Under the pieces are notes generated by a model that saw only the letters and a list, made by a program, of their open reading frames with translations, searched no databases and was not told the origin of the DNA. A program made the position numbers and the translations under genes. A stretch of DNA of 64,000 bases from Octopus bimaculoides (lineage: Eukaryota). The DNA lies in the NCBI RefSeq assembly GCF_001194135.2, contig NC_068987.1:13339487-13403486 (forward strand), given 5' to 3'. Position 1 is the stretch's first letter, and every line of letters begins with the position of its first letter. This document shows positions 2,353 through 27,849 of the stretch, in pieces.

Positions 2353-2468
2353 ATACTGTTAATAATGTCCGGAATATGACTTCGACAGGAATCCGAGGAG
2401 AACTAAAAATATCAATTCAGTATCAAAAAGAACACCTCCAAGTTATGATCATGCATGCAAGAGGCTTG
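2353..2468 (+). CDS. PIK3C2A: Class II PI3-kinase exon, start of C-terminal C2 domain (DTVNNVRNMTSTGIRGELKISIQYQKEHLQVMIMHARGL)
   Basis: cacag acceptor ending 2352 and gtatgt donor at 2469; 116 nt, phase 1 to 0. GELKISIQY...LQVMIMHA is C2 strand 1-2. Confidence 0.93.
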
Positions 2469-2897: not shown

Positions 2898-3023
2898 AGT
2901 TCATATGGAATTGAAAACCCCAGTCCTTATGTAAAACTCTACTTGCTACCAGATCCTGAAAAGCTAACGAAGCAAAAAACTAAAGTGGTTAAGCATTCAA
3001 CACACCCAACTTACAATGAAGTT
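2898..3023 (+). CDS. PIK3C2A: Class II PI3-kinase exon, C2 domain core (SSYGIENPSPYVKLYLLPDPEKLTKQKTKVVKHSTHPTYNEV)
   Basis: ctcag acceptor ending 2897 and gtaagt donor at 3024; 126 nt in frame. PYVKxYLLPD...KTK...PTYNE C2 signature. Confidence 0.95.
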
Positions 3024-3879: not shown

Positions 3880-4077
3880 ATGCAGTACAAGATGTCTCTG
3901 GAAGATGTTAAGAAGCGAACTTTGCAAGTGACTGTTTGGAACCATGATGTCTTGAAAGAGAACCAGTTCATGGGTGCTATATATATCCATTTACGAAAAC
4001 TAGACCTCAGTCAAGAAAACACAGAATGGCGCTGCCTTGGTAACCTACAGATGTCAAGTACCAGCCATATTTCCTGA
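3880..4077 (+). CDS. PIK3C2A: Class II PI3-kinase terminal coding exon (MQYKMSLEDVKKRTLQVTVWNHDVLKENQFMGAIYIHLRKLDLSQENTEWRCLGNLQMSSTSHIS*)
   Basis: gacag acceptor ending 3879, phase 0; C2 C-terminal half (LQVTVW...ENxFMG...W); TGA stop at 4075-4077. Confidence 0.95.
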   Translation: MQYKMSLEDVKKRTLQVTVWNHDVLKENQFMGAIYIHLRKLDLSQENTEWRCLGNLQMSSTSHIS

Positions 4078-5592: not shown

Positions 5593-7371
5593 CAATTAAA
5601 AAAACAACCCCTTTTGTTTAATGATGTTTTTGTAAATCATCACATTTATTTATTCATTTTAGAGAATTCTTGTTTTTTGTTTTTTTTTTGCTTTTTTTTT
5701 AACATAAATGTTTGGAACAATTCATTATACAACAATTGAATCTTTACAAGCTAAATATTAAATGGAATATTTAATAGTTTAAATGGAATTGAAAAATTTA
5801 TAAATTGTATATTTTTGAAATTATATACATTTTTGTGAGAAGAATATAATTTTGTTTTTTGGTTTTGTTTTAGTGGTGATGGGGACTGAGTATCTTTTAA
5901 TATTTCTCTTCAGGACTTCTCTTTAAATTGGAACAATATGATGTTTTCTATTTATTAAGAAAATAGTTTATGGTTGATTTACATTTCTTTAGAAGACAAA
6001 TCCTTAACCCTTTTTTACTATATTTTTTTATTGAAATACGCTGCCTTTTTTTAAAAATTAATTTTGAAAATAATGAAGAATTTAATTATTTTAGTAAAAT
6101 AGTTTCATCATTATCAAACTGGTGTTTGGAACATAAATTTATATAAAATTTTGATGGAAGGTTTTAATTTAGATCTCTTTAAAAAACATGAACCCTGTAT
6201 TATAGAACAAGGAACAGTCTAAGACAAGTTTATAACAAAAGAAATCACTAAAAGCCATGTAGTTCTTAACTCTGAAGTTTTCTTCTCTATCATTGAACAT
6301 TTATAATCATTTTTCTTTTTTTCTTTTTATTTTGTATTATACTTCTTAAGACGCTAGTCTAAAACATTAAAGATTTCCCCTTCTTTTTAAGCATTAAGCT
6401 GATACAATATTTGTTAAAATTTGTCCCTCCTGTGTTGTCTTCTGCCATTTTGTGTTCATTACTTTCATATATTTTCAGTACTTATACAACCTCCTTATAT
6501 TTATATATATATATGTGTGTATGTGTGGGCACATGTGATTGTCTGTGTGACTGTCTCATGATTATTTATCATGTTGATCATCATTGTAGTGCTACATCCA
6601 CTTCCCATACTAGCATGGGGTTGGAGGAGCTCTGGGCCAAGTTTAAGTCAGTTATTATTCAGAATTACTGCCTTCCTAACCAGATCAGAACACCACATCT
6701 TGTTTGTGCATTTCCTTTTTGGCTTGTTTTCTACAGGTGGATGCCTTTCTTATCACCAACCACTTTATATAATATACTGGCTGATTTTATCTAGCATCAA
6801 TATTTGACTGGTTGCTGTGTCTTTGTCAAGACCACAAGGTTTTCTCAATCTTGCATCATCTTCACTCATTTGCCTACTATTTCATAGAGTGTAATTGGTA
6901 TGTTTCATCGTGACATCAGGACTTCTTACAAGGATGTCTTGTATCCTCTAAAACAGAAGAGTCCTCATTATTCTGTGATGTGTTCAAGGTGGCAAACTGG
7001 CAGAATCGTTAGCATGCTGGGCAAAATGCATAGCAATATTTCATCTGCCACTATGTTCTGAGTTCAAATTAGTTGACATTTTCCTGACTACACATCATTC
7101 AGTAGCTCTGCTTTCAAAAACATCTGGAATTAAAATTCCTTATGCCGAAAAGCAGATTATGGTCACTAACAGGAAGGTTATCCAACTGTAGAAGCATAGT
7201 TCAATGAAATGTATTCATCTAACCCATGCAAACATGGAAAAATAGACATAAATAAACAACAAACAGACAAATATTGTCCCATCATTTTAAACATTTTGCT
7301 TGAAATTTCAAAATTCTATGCTGTGCATATGTGTGTGTATGTATGTATATATATATGTGTGTGTGTGTATG

Positions 7372-7410
<39 letters not shown>

Positions 7411-7649
7411 NNNNNNNNNNNNNNNNNNNNNNNNNNNNNNNNNNNNNNNNNNNNNNNNNNNNNNNNNNNNNNNNNNNNNNNNNNNNNNNNNNNNNNNNNN
7501 NNNNNNNNNNNATATATATGTACGTCTTGTATGTTTTTGTGTTGCCTGAAGAAACAACAAAGAATTTCTCTATTTAAGTAAAGCATTGATCAGTTGATAA
7601 ACTCATTTTAATCTGATATTAGATTTTTAATTTGTTTCATATTGGTTCT

Positions 7650-8040: not shown

Positions 8041-9239
8041 AAAATTTATCATCATTTCCAAATATACTCTTTTACTTGTTTCAGTCATTTGACTGTGGCC
8101 ATGCTGGAGCACTGCCTTTAGTCGAGCAAATCGACCCCGGGACTTATTCTATCGGTCTCTTTTTGCCGAACCGCTAAGTGACGGGGACATAAGCACAGCA
8201 GCATCGGTTGTCATGCAATGCTAGGGGGACAAACACAGACACACAAACACACACACATCACACATATATATGTGGCACATAAAAGACACCATTTCGAGCG
8301 TGGCCGTTTTCGTGCGGGTGACACGTAAAAGCACCCACTACACTCTCTGAGTGGTTGGCGTTAGGAAGGGCATCCAGCTGTAGAAACTCTGCCAAATTAG
8401 ATTGGAGCCTGGTGTAGCCATCCGGTTGCACCAGTCCTCAGTCAAATCGTCCAACCCATGCTAGCATGGAAAGCAGACGTTAAACGATGATGATGATGAT
8501 GATATACATATATACGACGGGCTTCTTTCAGTTTCCGTCGACCAAATCCACACACAAGGCTTTGGTCGGCCTGAGGCTATAGTAGANNNNNNNNNNNNNN
8601 NNNNNNNNNNNNNNNNNNNNNNNNNNNNNNNNNNNNNNNNNNNNNNNNNNNNNNNNNNNNNNNNNNNNNNNNNNNNNNNNNNNNNNNNNNNNNNNNNNNN
8701 NNNNNNNNNNNNNNNNNNNNNNNNNNNNNNNNNNNNNNNNNNNNNNNNNNNNNNNNNNNNNNNNNNNNNNNNNNNNNNNNNNNNNNNNNNNNNNNNNNNN
8801 NNNNNNNNNNNNNNNNNNNNNNNNNNNNNNNNTTTTTTTTCCAAATTTCTATTGAAATACACTGCCTTTGTTTCGTTTTGTTTTGAAAGTAATGAAGAAT
8901 TAATGACAAAATGATTTATGTTCAAACCAGCCAGATCTGGCCTATCACACTTATTCTACAATGTGATTCTAAAAATAAGCAATCACCTCATAAAAATCTC
9001 AAAGCTATGAGATAATGCATGATTAATTCTAAACAATGTGAATAAATAAGCTTTACATTTGACAGAATAATTTGAATGCTAAATGGTTAAACTTGCCCGT
9101 TTTTCATTTTTCTTATCTAAGGGTCATTTTTTGCCTCTGTCTTTTGTGACTACATCATTTGCCATTTATAATTTCCAACTTTATCATTCTAATAAATTAA
9201 TTCTACCAATAACTTAGTTTATAAATCTATTATTATGCA

Positions 9240-11538: not shown

Positions 11539-11697
11539 GGCTACCATTGGTTTCATGTTAAGAAAATATCAAAATATCTTAACACTTTTTCAAGTCAATC
11601 ACATGGAGGAATTGGGATTCGTCAGTTCCTACATGTGATCAGCTTAAAAAATTGGTAAGACATTATGATATTTTTTAACATGAAACCAATGGTAACC
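11539..11697. mobile_element. 159-bp MITE with GG termini and TTAA target duplication (Kolobok-like)
   Basis: ttaa|ggctaccattggtttcatgttaa...ttaacatgaaaccaatggtaacc|ttaa, with an internal second stem tcacatg...catgtga. Confidence 0.75.
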
Positions 11698-11823: not shown

Positions 11824-12710
11824 GCACTTCTTGGGGGCTGTGGGTTCGTCTCTCATGGGTATTTGTTGACAATTTCTTACCACCTTTTTCTACTGTTTTA
11901 ATGGCTATACTGCATTCAAATATATCACTTTCTCATTTGTATCATATGATACACATTTGGCGCTTCTAAAAAACAAATGTAAGTTTGTTTATATACACAC
12001 ATGATTGTTATATATTTAAATATATATATAAATCAACTTGGATGAGATTATGTTTAGTGCTGTGATAAATTTACGTGTATTTCTGTTAATAACCTCAATG
12101 TTATTTTCAGCAAAGTGAGATATCATATTTTAATATAAAACCATTTACTGGTGCTCAAAAGTGGTCTCACATTTCTTTTAATTAATTAGTTAAGTATTCT
12201 TTTTAAGACTGGATCACAACAACCAATATCTTTTCACTTTCTTTTTTACATAACTTCTCTATCTCTGGGCTCAGTTTTGTTTGTTTGTCTAATCCTTACA
12301 GTTTTAACAAAGAATATTTCTCATTGTTAACTAACAGAGCTATTCTCCATCAAAATGGTTCTTTCAAAGCTACAAGCTGACAAATACTTGATGAAATTGA
12401 AATGTATTTCAACCATGGCCACCGTGAATAAAGACATGGTGGCCATTGATATAGAATGTCATTTTCTAAGATTTTGAAGTTTAAAATGTGTGATCTCTGT
12501 TTTACAATAGCCAAGAACTTTATTGAGGGAGATTTCACTAACTCATTGAACAGATCAAGCAAATATGTCCAAATTGTCTTGTAAGGTCAATACGTACCAA
12601 TAATATACAGAGTCATGATTCCATCAACTATGGTCTCGTTCTTTTACAAAAGAAAATTGGCCTGATTTTACTTTAAAGAAATCGTCGCTATTTATATATA
12701 TATATATATA

Positions 12711-12898
12711 TATCTGTAAAAATATGGGACACTTATTCGGTAGCCATGATAAAACTCTGAGTTTCGGATGCCGGGGTGGAAGCCCACGCCAACATCTCTT
12801 CAGTTATCCGGCCATGTTGGCGTGGGCTCCCACCCTGGCATCCAAAACTCGGAGTTTTATCATGGCTACCAAATAAGTGTCACATATTTTTACAGATA
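12711..12898. repeat. Foldback with 85-nt arms and a hammerhead-ribozyme-like core on the - strand (12748-12808)
   Basis: Arms 12711-12795 and 12814-12898, about 90% complementary. Minus strand: GATAA CTGAAGA GATGTTGGCGTGG-gctt-CCACCCCGGCATC C GAAAC TCAGA GTT TTATC. Confidence 0.8.
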
Positions 12899-12957
12899 AA
12901 TTCCTCTATTTACATAATATCGAGGTCTCATTCTTTCTTTTGTCATCCTTCCTATTA

Positions 12958-14345: not shown

Positions 14346-14774
14346 ACTGTCGAAAATTGCAAGCTGTATGGAAAAATAAAAATGAAACGGTAGTCTCAGA
14401 TTTTTCTAGAATTGTTCCAAATGTCTTTTGTTGTGAATATGCACTGCTACAAACTATGTTTACCATCTTTATCACAAATATCACTATGTATGTGTACGTG
14501 TACAAACCTATGTTGATATATATGTACATGTTCATATGTAAATGTACATCCATGTATATATATATATATATACGTAAATATATGCTTACACATATACACG
14601 TACATATATATATATATATATATATGTGTTACTATATATATAATAGAATGTATGTGTATATATGTATTTCTGTGTATGTTTGTATATATACGTGTATTTA
14701 TATGTATGTGTGTATGTATATATATGTGTATGTATTTATCTGTGTGTGTATATATATGTATGTACATATGTATG

Positions 14775-14815
<41 letters not shown>
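13870..14815. repeat. (AT)n/(ATAC)n/(ATGT)n low-complexity field with poly-T, between N gaps
   Basis: Directly visible. Similar tracts flank most N gaps (e.g. 5389, 7330, 22000-22200, 47330-47475, 58390-58487). Confidence 0.95.
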
Positions 14816-15867: not shown

Positions 15868-16190
15868 GAAGGTGCATGGCTCAGTGGTTAGAGCGTTGAG
15901 CTTACGATCGTAAGGTTGTGAGTTTGATTCCCAGACCAGGCTGCATGTTATGTTCTTGAGCAAGACACTTTATTTCACGTTGCTCCAGTTTACTCAGCTG
16001 TAGAAATGAGTTGTGACATCACTGGTGCCAAGCTGTATCCGGCCTTTACCTTTCCCTTGGATAACATCAGTGGAGAGGGGAGGCTGGTATGCATGGGCGA
16101 TTGCTGGCCTTCCACAAACAACCTTGCCTGGACTTATACCTTGGAGGGTAACTTTCTAGGTGCAATCCCATGGTCATTCATGACTGAAGG
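15868..16190 (+). mobile_element. tRNA-derived SINE family E
   Basis: Head ggtgcatggctcagtggttagagcg...gtttgattccc (A/B-box-like). Reverse copies at about 19740-19910, 41277-41575 and 53890-54095. Confidence 0.75.
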
Positions 16191-17255
16191 AGGTCTCCCT
16201 CCTCCTCCTCATATATATGTGTGTGTATATATATCATCATCATCATCGTTTAACGTCCGCTTTCCATGCTAGCATGGGTTGGATGATTTGACTGAGGACT
16301 GGTGAAACTGGATGGCTACACCAGGCTCCAATCTGATTTGGCAGAGTTTCTACAGCTGGATGCCCTTCCTAACGCCAACCACTCAGAGAGTGTAGAGGGT
16401 GCTTAAAAAAAAATATCTGAACAAGAAACACAATACAACAACAAACAAAAAGAAAGAAAGCACAAAAACTGAAATAAAAAAATATTCTTTTATTTTTTTT
16501 ACTAATTTCTGAGACTGCTGGTTCAGGAAAAACATCTGGCTTTAGAAAATCTGCCTCAACAAATTCCATCTCATCCATGCAAGCATAGAAAAGGAGACAT
16601 TAAAATGATAATGAAGATGACAACAAGAATAATAATGGTGGTGGTGGTGGTGGTGAATATGATAATATGAGAGGAGCAGGTAGAAATCATTGGTGAAAGT
16701 TAGATGAGTATTAATAAAAAGTAAAAGAAAGATAGTTCAAACACACATACATGCAATTATTGATACCCTACGAAGCTTAGGTGTGATCCCCACAAAGGAG
16801 TAATGCTCTCACTCCTGGGATGGTGCTGCTGCTGGGGTGGTGCACTGCACACACAGGCAAGAGACTGTATCCAGAAAAGGCCCACCCAACTGATTTGCAT
16901 AATGTCAATCACCGACATATCTCCAGCTCACAGATTATCATATTAAATGATTGTCTCCTCTCTGCATTTTCTATATCTACTATAAAGGCTTGCTCATCAG
17001 ATCACATTGCATTCATTCTACCCCCACTCAGGCATTCTTTATCATACTTATCTCTCCTTCTCCCCTCAACCTTTCTTTCCTCCAACTCCCCGAGGCTTTA
17101 AACTAATCTCTATACCACCTGTAAGTAGGTTAAAATTATACCTACTGAAATTCATTTTCATTCTTCTTCACCCAGATCCAAATGGAACTCTTTTTAGCTT
17201 CTTCATCATCTAATATGCACACACACATACACACACACATATACACACCCATTTA

Positions 17256-18296: not shown

Positions 18297-18417
18297 AATA
18301 TAAACTATAAAAAAGATATTGAGTAATTCTTTAGTTTAATGTTAAATTGTTTTTATTCTAACTCAACATAAAACAAACTTTAGTGTATGTGTATGTGTAT
18401 ATATATATATAAACTTT

Positions 18418-18468
<51 letters not shown>

Positions 18469-18480
18469 GCCCTGACTTAC

Positions 18481-18862
18481 ACTTATTGAATCAACTATGA
18501 AGCTTCTATGTGGTTTCTTAACCTGCAAGAAATAGCAGTAAGATGTTCCTACATTCCACCAATCTTCAAAATTTCTTTGAAAAAAATGTAAAGGGCACAT
18601 TGCATAATGTAATCCTAGATAGACTACATTCAAAAGAAAGGCTATAATGCCTTCCATCATGGAGTTACTGACCTGGGGATAAACCAAGGCAACTAGACAT
18701 TTCTCTCTTCTCCAGTGGATTTTTCACAATCGATTGAATGAAGTCAGATTGTAATCACGGATCTTGGGAAATCCACGAGTTAACGTGACGTGTGATCTTC
18801 CCATGAGCCATGATTGCAATCAGCGTTAGTCTCCAACATTGGTTTGCTCTCGTCGGTCATCA
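18481..18862 (-). other. Putative exon hosting the miRNA hairpin
   Basis: Minus-strand tttttgtag acceptor at 18863 and gtaagt donor at 18480. The 5' part has stops in all three frames; the 3' part has an open frame MMEGIIAF...DSIS running to the donor. Confidence 0.45.
18754..18812 (-). ncRNA. mir-1986: Pre-miRNA hairpin, probable mir-1986 (mature 3p UGGAUUUCCCAAGAUCCGUGAU at 18754-18775)
   Basis: Minus strand reads CATGGCTCATGGGAAGATCACACGTCACGTTAACTCGTGGATTTCCCAAGATCCGTGAT, and the stem extends to 18747-18821. The 22-nt 3' arm matches the mollusc miR-1986 sequence as I recall it; not database-checked. Confidence 0.8.
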
Positions 18863-19196
18863 CTACAAAAATAAAAACAAAAATTTTGAAAGATTGACTG
18901 GTTTAGGTAGGTGGTTTGTAGCCAAGATATTATCATGGTTAACCATCAATCCTAGCACAAAAATCCATTCTTGAATTAGACACAATCATCGTAATCATCA
19001 TTTGACTGAGGACTGGTGAACCAGATGGCTGCACCAGGCTCCAATCTGATCTGGCAGAGTTTCTACAGCTGGATGCCCTTCCTAACGCCAACCACTCCGA
19101 GAGTGTAGTGGGTGCTTTTATGTGCCACCAGCACGAGGGCCAGTCAGGCGGTACTGGCAACGGCCATGCTCAAAATGGTATTTTTTACATGCCACC

Positions 19197-19227
<31 letters not shown>

Positions 19228-20964
19228 TTTCTTTAGAAACAGTTCATTGAAATCAATTATGTATATCTAGTGTTTGGAAATAAGAGGAAAGAAACTCACT
19301 TCAGGAGTGGAATATGAGACAGTCTCTGGTGTCTGTTTAGAATTGAACTCCTTGAGAAAGAAGTTTGTATAGTCCCAGGTGAGGCATGAGTACTCCATCA
19401 ACTCACATCTGGTTCATCTTATCATTGACAGCAACTCTTGTAAAAGGTGATTATTGTTCTGTTCCGAAAAAAGAAAAAAAAAATGGTTATGTGAGAGAGA
19501 AAGAGGAAAGAATGGTCGCAGTCAAATGAGTGAAATAAGTAAAAAGAAAATACAAAAAAAAAAAACAACAAGGCAAGAAGACTGAGATCTAACATAAGAT
19601 AATTGAAAGGTAAAGAGTTCAACTCTTGGCAAAATTTCCTATTAGAAACTTTTAGTTCTTGGGTAACTCAAATGAGGTTTAATAATATAATACAAAATGT
19701 GGCTCATGAGGCCTCCATTCAGGTGGTTTTCCTGAGTCACCATCTCACCTTTGTGTGTCAGTTTGTCACAAAGTTACCTATTTACAGCTGGGTGGACTGG
19801 TGTAACATGAAATGAAGTGTTTTGCTAAGAACACAATGCACAGCTGGTCTGGGAATTGAAATCACAATCTCACAATCATGACTGTGACACCCCTGGTCCA
19901 TGCGCCTTCACTATATAATTGTAACATGTAATGAACTAACTAAAGCCTTGTGAGTAGATTTGGTAGAGGGAAACTGAATGAAGCTTGTGTATATATCATC
20001 ATCATCACCGTAATTGTTTAACATCTCTTTTTTCCATGTTGGCATGGGTTGGATGGTTTGACAAGAACCGACAAGCCAGAGAGTTCCATCAGGTTCTATG
20101 TGTCTGTTCTGGCATTGCTTTTACAGCTGGATGTCCTTCCTAACACTAACCACTCAACAGAGTGTACTAGGTGATTTTTACATGACATCAGCACCAGTGG
20201 GGTTGCCAAGTGCCCAAAAGACAAGACCCCTTAACTAAGCAGAGTATAGACTGGAAGAACAAGCAACTATGATAGAGGAAGAGAATCATGTATCTTGCTG
20301 AAGAGGTGAAAACACAGACACACACACACACTTATAGATATATCATCGTCATTTAAAGTCCATTTTCTATATTGACATGATGATTGTAAATGAATGTTAC
20401 TCTTAATACAAGCAATGTATGTATATTTCCAATATCCTGCAAAAATATGTCTGGCCATGAAGAAACAGGTAACGGTTGGTGACAGGAAGGGCATCCAGCC
20501 ATAGAAAATCTACGTCAATAATCTTCATCTGACCCATGCAAGCATGGAAAAGTGGATGTTAAAACGATAGTAGAGGTGGTTGTGGTGGTCGTCGTCATCA
20601 TGGCAGTGGAGGGGGGGTTGAGATATATACACCACATTTTTAAAAATGCTTCTTCAAGGCGAGGGTTTGAAGAGTATAGGTTTTGTGAACATTGCAAATA
20701 CGAATATGAAGTTGTTTTTTCACAATAATTTAATCATTTAGTATCCAGACTTTAATATATTCTTTCTTCAAGCAAAAACTAATACCAACTATAAATACTC
20801 TAAATGAAACAAATGAGATTATTAGATAATTATGAATGTGATTATTAGATAATTATTAGATTATTAGATAATGGTGAGTAAAACTGGAAAGAGTTATTAT
20901 TCCCAAGATGTTTCTGGAAATAACGAAGATGATGGTCTTTGATAAAATTCTTTACGTATTCGTT

Positions 20965-21378
20965 GTGCGTGAGAAGACCCGGCAAGCCAAGTAAGATCGT
21001 TGCCAGTGCCCCTGGACTGGCTCTTGTGCGGGTGGCACATGAGATGCACCATTTTGAGCGTGGCCGTTGCCAGTACCGCCTGACTGGCTCCCGTAGGATT
21101 TTCGAGTGAGATCGTTGCCAGTGCCCCTGGGCTGGCTCTTGTGCGGGTGGCACATAAAAGACACCATTTCGAGCGTGGCCGTTTTTGTGCGGGTGACACG
21201 TAAAAGCACCCACTACACTCTCTGAGTGGTTGGCGTTAGGAAGGGCATCCAGCTGTAGAAACTCTGCCAAATTAAGATTGGAGCCTGGTGTTGCCATCCG
21301 GTTTTACCAGTCCTCAGTCAAATCGTCCAACCCATGCTAGCATGGAAAGCGGACGTTAAACGATGATGATGATGATGA
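20965..21378 (+). mobile_element. Retroposon family C ending in (GAT)n, with internal tandem subrepeats
   Basis: Repeated gttgccagtgcccctgg/gtgcgggtggcac blocks, then ttaggaagggcatccagctgtagaaactctgcc...ggacgttaaacgatgatg. Copies at about 8275-8500, 15325-15414, 16233-16405, 18990-19195, 19985-20200 and 20430-20570. Confidence 0.8.
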
Positions 21379-27480: not shown

Positions 27481-27849
27481 GGTTACACTGATCATTATGA
27501 CAAAGTGAAAATGTCGCTGACGTAAGAAATGGTGTTTGTATGAATGTGTGTGAGTGCATATGTGTGTATGTGCATGTGTGTGTGTGCATGTGTACGAGTA
27601 TGTATTTATATTCATACACACACATATATTAATGTATATATGTATTTAAGCATATCTATTTTTACATACGTATATTATATAGATAGTAGATAGATCAGAT
27701 TAGTAGACAGACAGATAGACAGATGGTGTTAATGTGTGCGTGTACACGTGTGTGTAAATGCGAATGTGTGTCTGTTCACAAAAATCCCAAAGCACCTTCG
27801 TGCGAGCGTATATGTAAATACATATACAACACAAACTCTCTCTTTCTCT

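What the first reader, a model, noticed from the sequence alone, without database searches (positions are those of the whole stretch)
18481..18862. Probable mir-1986 inside an apparent spliced exon of an unannotated minus-strand transcript
The hairpin starts about 40 nt after a strong acceptor, and a gtaagt donor lies about 270 nt downstream. An exonic position would make Drosha cropping compete with mRNA production. After the hairpin an open frame (MMEGIIAFLLNVVYLGLHYAMCPLHFFQRNFEDWWNVGTSYCYFLQVKKPHRSFIVDSIS) with a hydrophobic start runs to the donor in phase 0. A phase-compatible but weak downstream exon is 12350-12577 (TIWTYLLDLFNELV...KEPF*). This is either a lncRNA host or a dual miRNA/small-protein locus. 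The segment keeps several CpGs inside a CpG-poor block, suggesting selection. The miRNA name is from recall.
Basis: partly seen in the sequence, partly recalled or inferred. Interest (0 to 1): 0.7.

Follow-up and report, generated by a model that had tools for sequence, protein, structure and literature searches.

The report
Known microRNA mir-1986; exon claim unsupported
The hairpin is a genuine copy of mir-1986, a microRNA already known from molluscs and annelids, but nothing in the sequence shows that it sits in a spliced exon or that the open frame behind it encodes a protein.

Summary
The microRNA call is correct. The minus-strand hairpin 18747-18821 folds at -35.3 kcal/mol (z -4.25). Its 3' arm (18775..18754) is 22/22 identical to published bgl-/hru-miR-1986-3p, and Rfam's mir-1986 model is the only non-microsatellite hit (32.4 bits, below the gathering score of 50). 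Two independent mir-1986 hairpins from marine metagenomes share the invariant 3' arm and the fold.

The exon and small-protein reading is not supported:
- Splice-like sites as good as the two proposed occur about twice per kb per strand.
- Stronger sites lie inside the proposed exon (18673/18672 and 18523/18522).
- Parses that put the hairpin in an intron score higher (up to 22.6 bits against 12.6).
- The 60-codon frame has no Pfam match and no credible homologue among 1.84 billion representative proteins. It is not conserved next to the other mir-1986 copies, and its length is ordinary for this AT-rich window.
- The retained CpGs lie in and just upstream of the hairpin, not in the open frame.

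RNA data are needed to settle the transcript structure. Verdict: an ordinary, already known microRNA gene of low interest.

The parts
18747..18821 (-). pri-miRNA stem-loop of mir-1986 (lower stem, duplex and 11-nt terminal loop at 18778-18788)
   Evidence: MFE -35.3 kcal/mol, z -4.25. The fold is shared with two independent mir-1986 hairpins: 30 consensus pairs, with changes almost all on the 5' arm and wobble-compatible.
18754..18812 (-). predicted pre-miRNA (Drosha product, 59 nt)
   Evidence: Inferred from the fold and the known 3p end by the 2-nt overhang rule. The Rfam mir-1986 match spans 18754-18815.
18754..18775 (-). mature miR-1986-3p, UGGAUUUCCCAAGAUCCGUGAU (seed GGAUUUC)
   Evidence: 22/22 identical to bgl-miR-1986-3p / hru-miR-1986 (PMC7328434). 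Unique in the window. Invariant in L001 and L002.
18791..18812 (-). predicted 5p (star) strand, CAUGGCUCAUGGGAAGAUCACA
   Evidence: Inferred from the pairing: 18 base pairs with the 3p arm and a 2-nt offset. No read data.
18863..18885 (-). acceptor-like motif (T-rich tract + AG); the proposed exon would start at 18862
   Evidence: Read. 6.5 bits on a rough PWM; 1.9 sites per kb per strand score at least as well.
18475..18480 (-). donor-like GTAAGT; the proposed exon would end at 18481
   Evidence: Read. 6.1 bits (T at -1); 2.2 sites per kb per strand score at least as well; 27 GTAAGT in the window on both strands.
18481..18660 (-). 60-codon ATG-initiated open frame (MMEGII...DSIS); most likely a chance open frame
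   Evidence: No Pfam match. No homologue. Not conserved in L001 or L002. Length ordinary for the window. CpG o/e 0.12.
18667..18690 (-). stronger splice-like site inside the proposed exon: ...TTTATCCCCAG|GTCAGT (junction 18673|18672), just upstream of the ATG
   Evidence: Scores 9.5 bits as a donor and 10.6 bits as an acceptor.
18522..18545 (-). strongest acceptor-like site within 1.5 kb either side, CTGCTATTTCTTGCAG|G (junction 18523|18522), in the middle of the open frame
   Evidence: 11.7 bits.
18397..18470 (.). (TA)n/(CA)n microsatellite directly after the donor-like site. It keeps the mechanical ORF open to 18358 and produces spurious mir-297/mir-466 Rfam matches.
18997..19203 (.). interspersed (SINE-like) repeat copy bounding the unique island that holds the hairpin
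   Evidence: 81-93% identical copies at 8264-8447, 16283-16404 and 21187-21323.

Best explanation
This is the window's copy of MIR-1986, a microRNA family conserved across lophotrochozoans.

Inferred from the standard animal microRNA pathway:
- The minus strand is transcribed by RNA polymerase II into a primary transcript of unknown extent.
- The Microprocessor (Drosha with its partner) crops the stem at about 18812 and 18754.
- Dicer removes the loop.
- The 3' arm, UGGAUUUCCCAAGAUCCGUGAU, is loaded into Argonaute. Through its seed GGAUUUC it represses mRNAs that carry complementary sites.

Shown here: the sequence identity of the guide arm, the hairpin geometry, and its conservation in independent genomes. 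Expression, the cleavage sites and the targets are inferred.

Context: the locus lies in a roughly 700-nt unique island between repeats. It is 14.7 kb beyond, and convergent with, the stop codon of a PI3K-C2-like gene, so it looks intergenic.

The proposed exon 18862-18481 and the 60-codon frame are most likely chance features of AT-rich sequence. The primary transcript may be unspliced here, or the hairpin may lie in an intron. The sequence cannot decide between these.
For: - Hairpin: -35.3 kcal/mol, z -4.25.
- Guide arm: 22/22 identical to bgl-miR-1986-3p / hru-miR-1986 (PMC7328434).
- Rfam: mir-1986 is the only non-microsatellite Rfam match in the region. It is a full-length match on the minus strand, E 3.8e-4 in the local scan and 0.035 window-wide.
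- Independent copies: two metagenome hairpins carry the same invariant 3' arm and the same fold, and score 40.2 and 31.8 bits.
- Family range: described as Lophotrochozoa-wide (PMC12257675).
- CpG: retained on the hairpin only, o/e about 1.0-1.2 against 0.12 in the open frame.
- Splice-like sites: as frequent as about 2 per kb per strand, and 5-6% of random positions are flanked in the same way.
- Competing sites: stronger sites lie inside the proposed exon, and intron parses sum to 19-22.6 bits against 12.6 for the proposed exon.
- Open frame: no Pfam match, no word-sharing homologue, and no real match in 1.84 billion representatives. The single hit is a 21-fold tandem-repeat translation whose score is the sum of 20 identical weak matches of 10/25 identities.
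- Open frame elsewhere: tblastn to L001 and L002 gives E > 2.
- Neighbouring gene: the PI3K-C2-like coding sequence ends at 4077 on the + strand.
Against: - The Rfam score (32.4) is below the curated gathering score (50).
- No small-RNA reads are available, so expression is not shown.
- The splice-site matrices were written from memory as generic metazoan approximations. They were not trained on this species.
- The proposed sites score as well as the real sites of the C2 exons in this window (acceptors 11.7 and 6.5, donors 5.5 and 5.6), so they are usable sites.
- If all three features had been specified in advance, the joint chance of acceptor, donor and open frame would be about 0.1-0.3%.
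- One of the two metagenome copies (L001) also has an acceptor-like site upstream and a strong CAG|GTGAGT about 190 nt downstream.
- Peptides encoded in microRNA primary transcripts are often not conserved (PMC9953219), so missing homologues do not exclude translation.
- No genome or transcriptome of a close relative could be reached, so selection on the frame and the sites was not tested.
Confidence: 0.72

Rival explanations
1. The hairpin lies in an internal exon (18862-18481, or 18862-18673) of a spliced, unannotated minus-strand non-coding host transcript. Microprocessor cropping would then destroy the spliced RNA, and the two outcomes would compete.
For: - The acceptor-like and donor-like motifs are present and score like the real sites of this window.
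- The acceptor lies 41 nt before the stem, so the lower stem would be intact in a spliced RNA.
- L001 shows a loosely similar arrangement.
- Exonic microRNAs in non-coding hosts are well known (PMC7566567, PMC6097652).
Against: - Equally good sites occur about twice per kb per strand.
- The exact exon ranks 7th of 10 exon parses and below many intron parses.
- It contains a better donor-like site at 18672 and the best acceptor-like site of the region at 18522.
- In L001 the acceptor-like AG lies inside the lower stem, and L002 has no such arrangement.
- There are no RNA data.
Confidence: 0.13
2. The hairpin lies in a short intron of an unannotated minus-strand transcript. The donor would be at 19748, 19406 or 19299 and the acceptor at 18673 or 18523. 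This is the ordinary intronic-microRNA arrangement.
For: These parses have the highest summed motif scores around the hairpin, 18.8-22.6 bits. The motifs were read. Intronic location is the commonest arrangement for hosted microRNAs (PMC8465124).
Against: - It rests on the same weak kind of evidence, motif scores from an untrained matrix.
- No flanking coding exon was recognised by eye among minus-strand open segments.
- The nearest identified gene is on the other strand.
Confidence: 0.2
3. A dual-function locus. The same spliced RNA yields miR-1986 or is translated into a small hydrophobic protein of at least 60 residues that continues in a downstream exon such as 12350-12577. This would be a peptide encoded in a microRNA primary transcript.
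For: - The ATG-initiated frame of 60 codons is open to the donor-like site in phase 0. Only 1.4% of shuffles of the segment give one as long.
- Such peptides exist in animals and are often poorly conserved (PMC9953219).
Against: - No Pfam match and no homologue.
- Four of 57 GTRAGT sites in the window have an equally long terminal frame.
- The ATG lies after a better donor-like site, and the frame is cut by the best acceptor-like site.
- CpG o/e is 0.12, like neutral flanks.
- The hydrophobic look follows from a T-rich sense strand: 37% T overall and 40% T at codon position 2.
- The proposed downstream exon has a weak acceptor and no domain.
- Six kb with two assembly gaps lie between the two proposed exons.
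Confidence: 0.03
4. The hairpin is a dead or chance copy that is not processed into a microRNA.
For: The Rfam score is below the gathering score. No expression data are available.
Against: - A perfect 22-nt match is not expected by chance.
- The arm is embedded in a stable hairpin of the right geometry, with the guide on the correct arm.
- CpGs are retained on the hairpin in a CpG-depleted neighbourhood.
- It is the only copy in the window.
Confidence: 0.03

Closest known systems
MIR-1986 / mir-1986 microRNA family (Rfam RF03753; hru-, lgi- and bgl-miR-1986)
   Same: The 22-nt guide and seed are identical. The guide is on the 3' arm. The precursor is about 60 nt with the same stem architecture. 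The family is reported as Lophotrochozoa-wide.
   Different: The 5' arm and loop diverge from the Rfam seed sequences, so the covariance score (32.4 bits) stays under the gathering score (50). The two metagenome copies are also under it.
Exonic microRNAs in spliced non-coding host genes, and splice-site-overlapping microRNAs, where Microprocessor and spliceosome compete (PMC7566567, PMC6097652)
   Different: Here there is no evidence of a host transcript or of splicing. The motifs are at chance density, and better competing sites exist.
Peptides encoded by microRNA primary transcripts (miPEPs; review PMC9953219)
   Same: A short ATG-initiated frame lies on the same strand near a microRNA hairpin.
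   Different: Known examples were shown by translation assays, and in plants the translated ORF is usually the first one after the transcription start, 5' of the hairpin. This frame is downstream of the hairpin and has no support from homology, composition or conservation.

Membership tests
MIR-1986 microRNA family | Guide (mature) sequence and seed identical or nearly identical to family members | tested here: met
   18775..18754 (-) is 22/22 identical to bgl-miR-1986-3p, which is listed with 0 mismatches to hru-miR-1986. It matches the conserved 3' arm of the Rfam consensus.
MIR-1986 microRNA family | Guide lies on the 3' arm of a stable hairpin, with at least 16 paired bases in the duplex and 2-nt offset geometry | tested here: met
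   The fold has 18 pairs between 18812-18791 and 18775-18754, an 11-nt loop, -35.3 kcal/mol and z -4.25. This was tested in silico only.
MIR-1986 microRNA family | Match to the curated covariance model at its gathering score | tested here: inconclusive
   32.4 bits against a gathering score of 50, with E 3.8e-4 over 701 nt and 0.035 over the window. Two independent hairpins with the identical guide also stay below it, at 40.2 and 31.8 bits. The threshold is a property of a small seed alignment, not of the family.
MIR-1986 microRNA family | Hairpin structure conserved among homologues | tested here: met
   RNAalifold on the window, L001 and L002 gives 30 pairs. The 3' arm is invariant, and the 5' arm changes are mostly G-U/A-U/G-C switches that keep the pairs. 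With only three sequences this is weak evidence by itself.
MIR-1986 microRNA family | Expression as roughly 22-nt RNAs with precise 5' ends from both arms | not testable with these tools
   No small-RNA read data are accessible.
Exonic microRNA in a spliced host transcript | Spliced transcripts whose exon contains the whole hairpin (junction reads on both sides) | not testable with these tools
   No transcript data are accessible. Exact-product look-ups for ORFs of the locus found nothing.
Exonic microRNA in a spliced host transcript | Flanking splice signals that stand out from background | tested here: not met
   Sites at least as good occur about twice per kb per strand, and 5-6% of random positions are flanked alike. 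The proposed exon ranks 7th of 10 exon parses and below the intron parses. The matrices are approximate.
Peptide encoded in a microRNA primary transcript (miPEP-like) | The ORF is translated | not testable with these tools
   No ribosome profiling or proteomics data are accessible.
Peptide encoded in a microRNA primary transcript (miPEP-like) | Sequence evidence of coding (homologues, domain, or conservation of the frame) | tested here: not met
   No Pfam match. No homologue. The only hit among 1.84 billion representatives is a tandem-repeat artefact. There is no similarity beside the other mir-1986 copies. The frame length is ordinary for the window. Known miPEPs are often unconserved, so this lowers the claim but does not exclude it.

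The most novel reading that the evidence does not exclude
The hairpin sits in an internal exon of a spliced minus-strand transcript that can also be translated into a lineage-specific small hydrophobic protein. Each primary transcript would then yield either miR-1986 or the protein. This would be the first miPEP-like dual locus in a mollusc, attached to an ancient lophotrochozoan microRNA.
Probability: 0.03. Interest if true: 0.55.

Novelty: already known. Interest (0 to 1): 0.12.

Why it matters
As it stands this is an annotation point. It places a conserved lophotrochozoan microRNA in an apparently intergenic stretch, tail to tail with a PI3K-C2-like gene. The family, its guide sequence and its phylogenetic range are already published. 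I could not check whether this particular locus is already catalogued in MirGeneDB or miRBase.

The result also shows that, in AT-rich and repeat-rich genomes like this one, splice-like motifs and 60-codon open frames are too frequent to be read as exons without RNA evidence. Only if the exon and the frame were confirmed experimentally would the locus gain interest, as an animal example of competition between microRNA cropping and translation.

Tried and rejected
1. Transcripts or orthologous DNA through the protein collections. Exact-product look-ups for six ORFs in and around the locus found nothing, and so did a look-up for the last C2 exon. The source genome and its close relatives seem to be absent from these collections, so cross-species conservation of the frame and the splice sites could not be tested.

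2. Homologues of the 69-residue frame.
- The word-indexed search gave none.
- The exhaustive search gave one hit, E 1e-34. It is a perfect 53-residue unit repeated 21 times, so the score is the sum of 20 identical weak matches of 10/25 identities. I rejected it as an artefact.

3. Naming the organism from the C2-domain exons. This returned only five weak, short hits, none from a cephalopod, and one Logan contig from an unnamed run. It is consistent with, but not shown by, the composition and repeats.

4. Whole-frame Pfam scan of 3-12 kb.

5. Supplements of the octopus microRNA paper (PMC9699675). They contain no entry for Mir-1986 in the files held. No paper in the library ties miR-1986 to a cephalopod.

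6. The bacterial promoter and terminator scan is irrelevant to a eukaryotic locus and was ignored.

7. RNY and G1 codon statistics. The frame lies within the null distribution of random open windows, but the test has little power at 60 codons. My concatenation of the real exons in that script was out of frame by one base, so the codon-position figures for the real exons are not used.

8. Other Rfam matches in the window (mir-297, mir-466, mir-1277 and others) all fall on (TA)n/(CA)n microsatellites and were rejected.

Full report
**What is in the sequence**

Read on the minus strand, the region contains the following, in order:
- a T-rich tract ending in AG at 18864-18863;
- 41 nt later, the base of a hairpin;
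- the hairpin itself;
- an ATG at 18660 that opens a 60-codon frame;
- GTAAGT at 18480-18475;
- a (TA)n/(CA)n microsatellite.

This includes the translation MMEGII...DSIS and the frame TIWTYLLDLFNELV...KEPF* at 12350-12577.

**The hairpin is mir-1986**

Window 18740-18840 (-) folds into a single long stem pairing 18821 to 18747. Its energy is -35.3 kcal/mol against -21.3 +/- 3.3 for dinucleotide shuffles (z -4.25), and none of 200 shuffles folds as well.

Identity of the 3' arm:
- It reads TGGATTTCCCAAGATCCGTGAT at 18775..18754.
- It occurs once in the window, where none is expected even with three mismatches.
- It is letter for letter the 22-nt bgl-miR-1986-3p of Biomphalaria glabrata, which PMC7328434 lists with zero mismatches to the abalone hru-miR-1986.

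Rfam evidence:
- Nothing in the window reaches a gathering score.
- In the permissive scan, the mir-1986 model RF03753 matches 18754-18815 (-) over its full length. The score is 32.4 bits, with E 3.8e-4 for the 701-nt scan and 0.035 for the whole window. The plus strand scores 18.7 bits.
- All other matches in the region or the window lie on microsatellites.

The family is described as Lophotrochozoa-level in PMC12257675.

**Independent copies**

One exact-match scan of the metagenome collection with the first 21 nt of the guide returned two contigs, L001 and L002. Both carry a hairpin with the same invariant 3' arm. They score 40.2 and 31.8 bits on the same Rfam model, also under its gathering score of 50. 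The threshold therefore reflects a narrow seed alignment, not a defect of the window's copy.

In a three-way alignment the consensus fold has 30 pairs. The 3' arm is invariant over more than 24 nt. Most changes on the 5' arm switch between G-U, A-U and G-C and keep the pair.

From the fold and the known 3p end, the predicted Drosha product is 18812-18754. The star strand is about 18812-18791, with 18 pairs in the duplex, and the loop is 11 nt.

**The exon is not supported**

I scored all GT and AG dinucleotides of the window with simple position-weight matrices. These were generic metazoan frequencies written from memory, so they are approximate.

How the proposed sites compare with the background:
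- The proposed acceptor scores 6.5 bits and the proposed donor 6.1 bits.
- The real splice sites of the C2-domain exons at 2.3-3.0 kb score similarly: acceptors 11.7 and 6.5, donors 5.5 and 5.6.
- Sites at least as good as the proposed ones occur 1.9 (acceptors) and 2.2 (donors) times per kb per strand.
- 5-6% of all positions in the window have such an acceptor within 60 nt upstream and such a donor within 300 nt downstream.

Competing sites:
- The proposed exon contains better sites. CCCCAG|GTCAGT at 18673|18672 scores 9.5 bits as a donor and 10.6 bits as an acceptor, and it lies 12 nt before the ATG. TTCTTGCAG|G at 18523|18522 scores 11.7 bits, the best acceptor-like site within 1.5 kb, and it lies in the middle of the frame.
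- Parses that make the hairpin intronic (donors at 19748, 19406 or 19299, acceptors at 18673 or 18523) sum to 18.8-22.6 bits.

The motifs therefore do not favour an exonic position. They do not exclude it either, and only RNA data can decide. Of the two metagenome copies, L001 has an acceptor-like AG, but inside the lower stem, and a strong CAG|GTGAGT about 190 nt downstream. L002 has neither.

**The open frame is most likely chance**

- A frame of at least 60 codons that starts at ATG and stays open to the 3' end arises in 1.4% of dinucleotide shuffles of the 382-nt segment.
- Empirically, 4 of the 57 GTRAGT sites in the window (the candidate included) have such a frame. The window holds 166 stop-free stretches of at least 70 codons.
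- There is no Pfam match for this frame or for the proposed downstream exon.
- No protein in the 5.8-billion collection shares enough words to be a candidate.
- The exhaustive search of 1.84 billion representatives returned one protein. It is a perfect 53-residue unit repeated 21 times, so its E-value is the sum of 20 identical matches of 10/25 identities. I treat it as an artefact.
- tblastn of the frame against L001 and L002 finds nothing (E > 2). Only 24-28 nt around the guide arm are shared between the window and those contigs.
- The hydrophobic start is what a T-rich sense strand gives: 37% T overall and 40% T at codon position 2.

Caveat: peptides encoded in microRNA primary transcripts are known in animals and are often unconserved (PMC9953219). 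Translation is made unlikely here, not excluded.

**The CpG argument**

The 382-nt segment has 8 CpGs, o/e 0.55, which equals the window mean of 0.57. The flanks are at 0.17-0.23. Seven of the eight CpGs lie between 18731 and 18854. The hairpin alone has o/e about 1.0-1.2, while 18481-18739 has one CpG (o/e 0.12). If this reflects selection, it acts on the hairpin and its immediate 5' flank, not on the frame.

**Surroundings**

- Positions 18297-18996 are unique in the window. They are bounded by interspersed repeats, including a SINE-like copy at 18997-19203 with relatives at 8.3, 16.3 and 21.2 kb.
- On the plus strand, three exons (2353-2468, 2898-3023 and 3880-4077 including the stop) encode a C2 domain. 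Its best solved relative is the C-terminal C2 domain of PI3K-C2 alpha (6bu0, E 2.5e-14).
- That gene ends 14.7 kb from the hairpin and converges on it.
- I recognised no minus-strand coding exon by eye among 323 open segments. This is a weak negative.
- The locus therefore looks intergenic.

**Comparison with what is known, and verdict**

The hairpin is a member of a known microRNA family. The membership features that can be tested in silico are met, and the one curated score threshold is not reached, for an understandable reason.

It corresponds to known classes: exonic microRNAs in non-coding hosts (PMC7566567), splice-site-overlapping microRNAs (PMC6097652) and miPEPs (PMC9953219). It would not be a new kind of system even if true.

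My probabilities are:
- about 0.95 that this is a real mir-1986 gene;
- about 0.13 that it lies in the proposed exon or a variant of it;
- about 0.2 that it is intronic in a short intron;
- about 0.03 that the frame is translated into a functional protein.

Interest is low.

Noticed in passing
window 2353-2468, 2898-3023, 3880-4077 (+): Three terminal coding exons of a PI3K class II (PI3K-C2 alpha-like) gene encode its C-terminal C2 domain, with the stop codon at 4075-4077. The gene converges on the microRNA 14.7 kb away.
   Followed up: partly
window 12692-12795 and 12814-12917: A large foldback: inverted repeat with 104-nt arms, 88% complementary, and an 18-nt spacer. The central 85 nt fold at -64.8 kcal/mol. 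It could be a foldback or MITE-like element, or a long-hairpin source of small RNAs.
   Followed up: partly
L001 1371-1446 (+) and L002 3425-3499 (-): In both metagenome contigs that carry mir-1986, a second conserved block (74% identity over 76 nt) lies about 500-600 nt upstream on the same strand. It folds as a hairpin with a compensatory change in the upper stem (CCUGAGGC/GCCUCGGG against CCUGGGGC/GCCCCGAG). It has no Rfam match and is absent from the window. It may be a clustered second microRNA or another structured RNA in those unidentified animals.
   Followed up: partly
window 18997-19203; also 8264-8447, 16283-16404, 21187-21323: Multiple copies (81-93% identity) of a SINE-like interspersed repeat. 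One copy lies directly upstream (in the minus sense) of the microRNA island.
   Followed up: no
window 54140-54469 (+): A 109-residue ORF whose motif (...WPSCSPDLTSPDFFLLGHLKGRVY...) recalls, from memory, the C-terminal part of a mariner/Tc1-type transposase. Pfam gave no significant match, so this is unconfirmed.
   Followed up: partly
window 11577-11661 (both strands) and 16025-16109 (+): Two further stable hairpins turned up in a 9-30 kb fold scan (-32.5 / -30.9 and -36.9 kcal/mol). The second lies in sequence that recurs elsewhere in the window, so it is probably repeat-derived. Neither matches an Rfam family.
   Followed up: no
window-wide, e.g. 5.1-5.4, 7.4, 8.6-8.8, 13.1-13.9, 14.8-15.3, 56.0-56.2, 58.5-58.9 kb: There are 3,324 N in many assembly gaps, usually next to (TA)n or (CA)n microsatellites, so this is a draft assembly. 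Two gaps lie between the microRNA and the proposed downstream exon.
   Followed up: no
window, many sites (e.g. 14744-14814, 7343-7413, 27564-27632): Sub-threshold Rfam matches to mir-297, mir-466, mir-1277, mir-3149 and others all fall on microsatellites and are artefacts of low-complexity sequence.
   Followed up: yes
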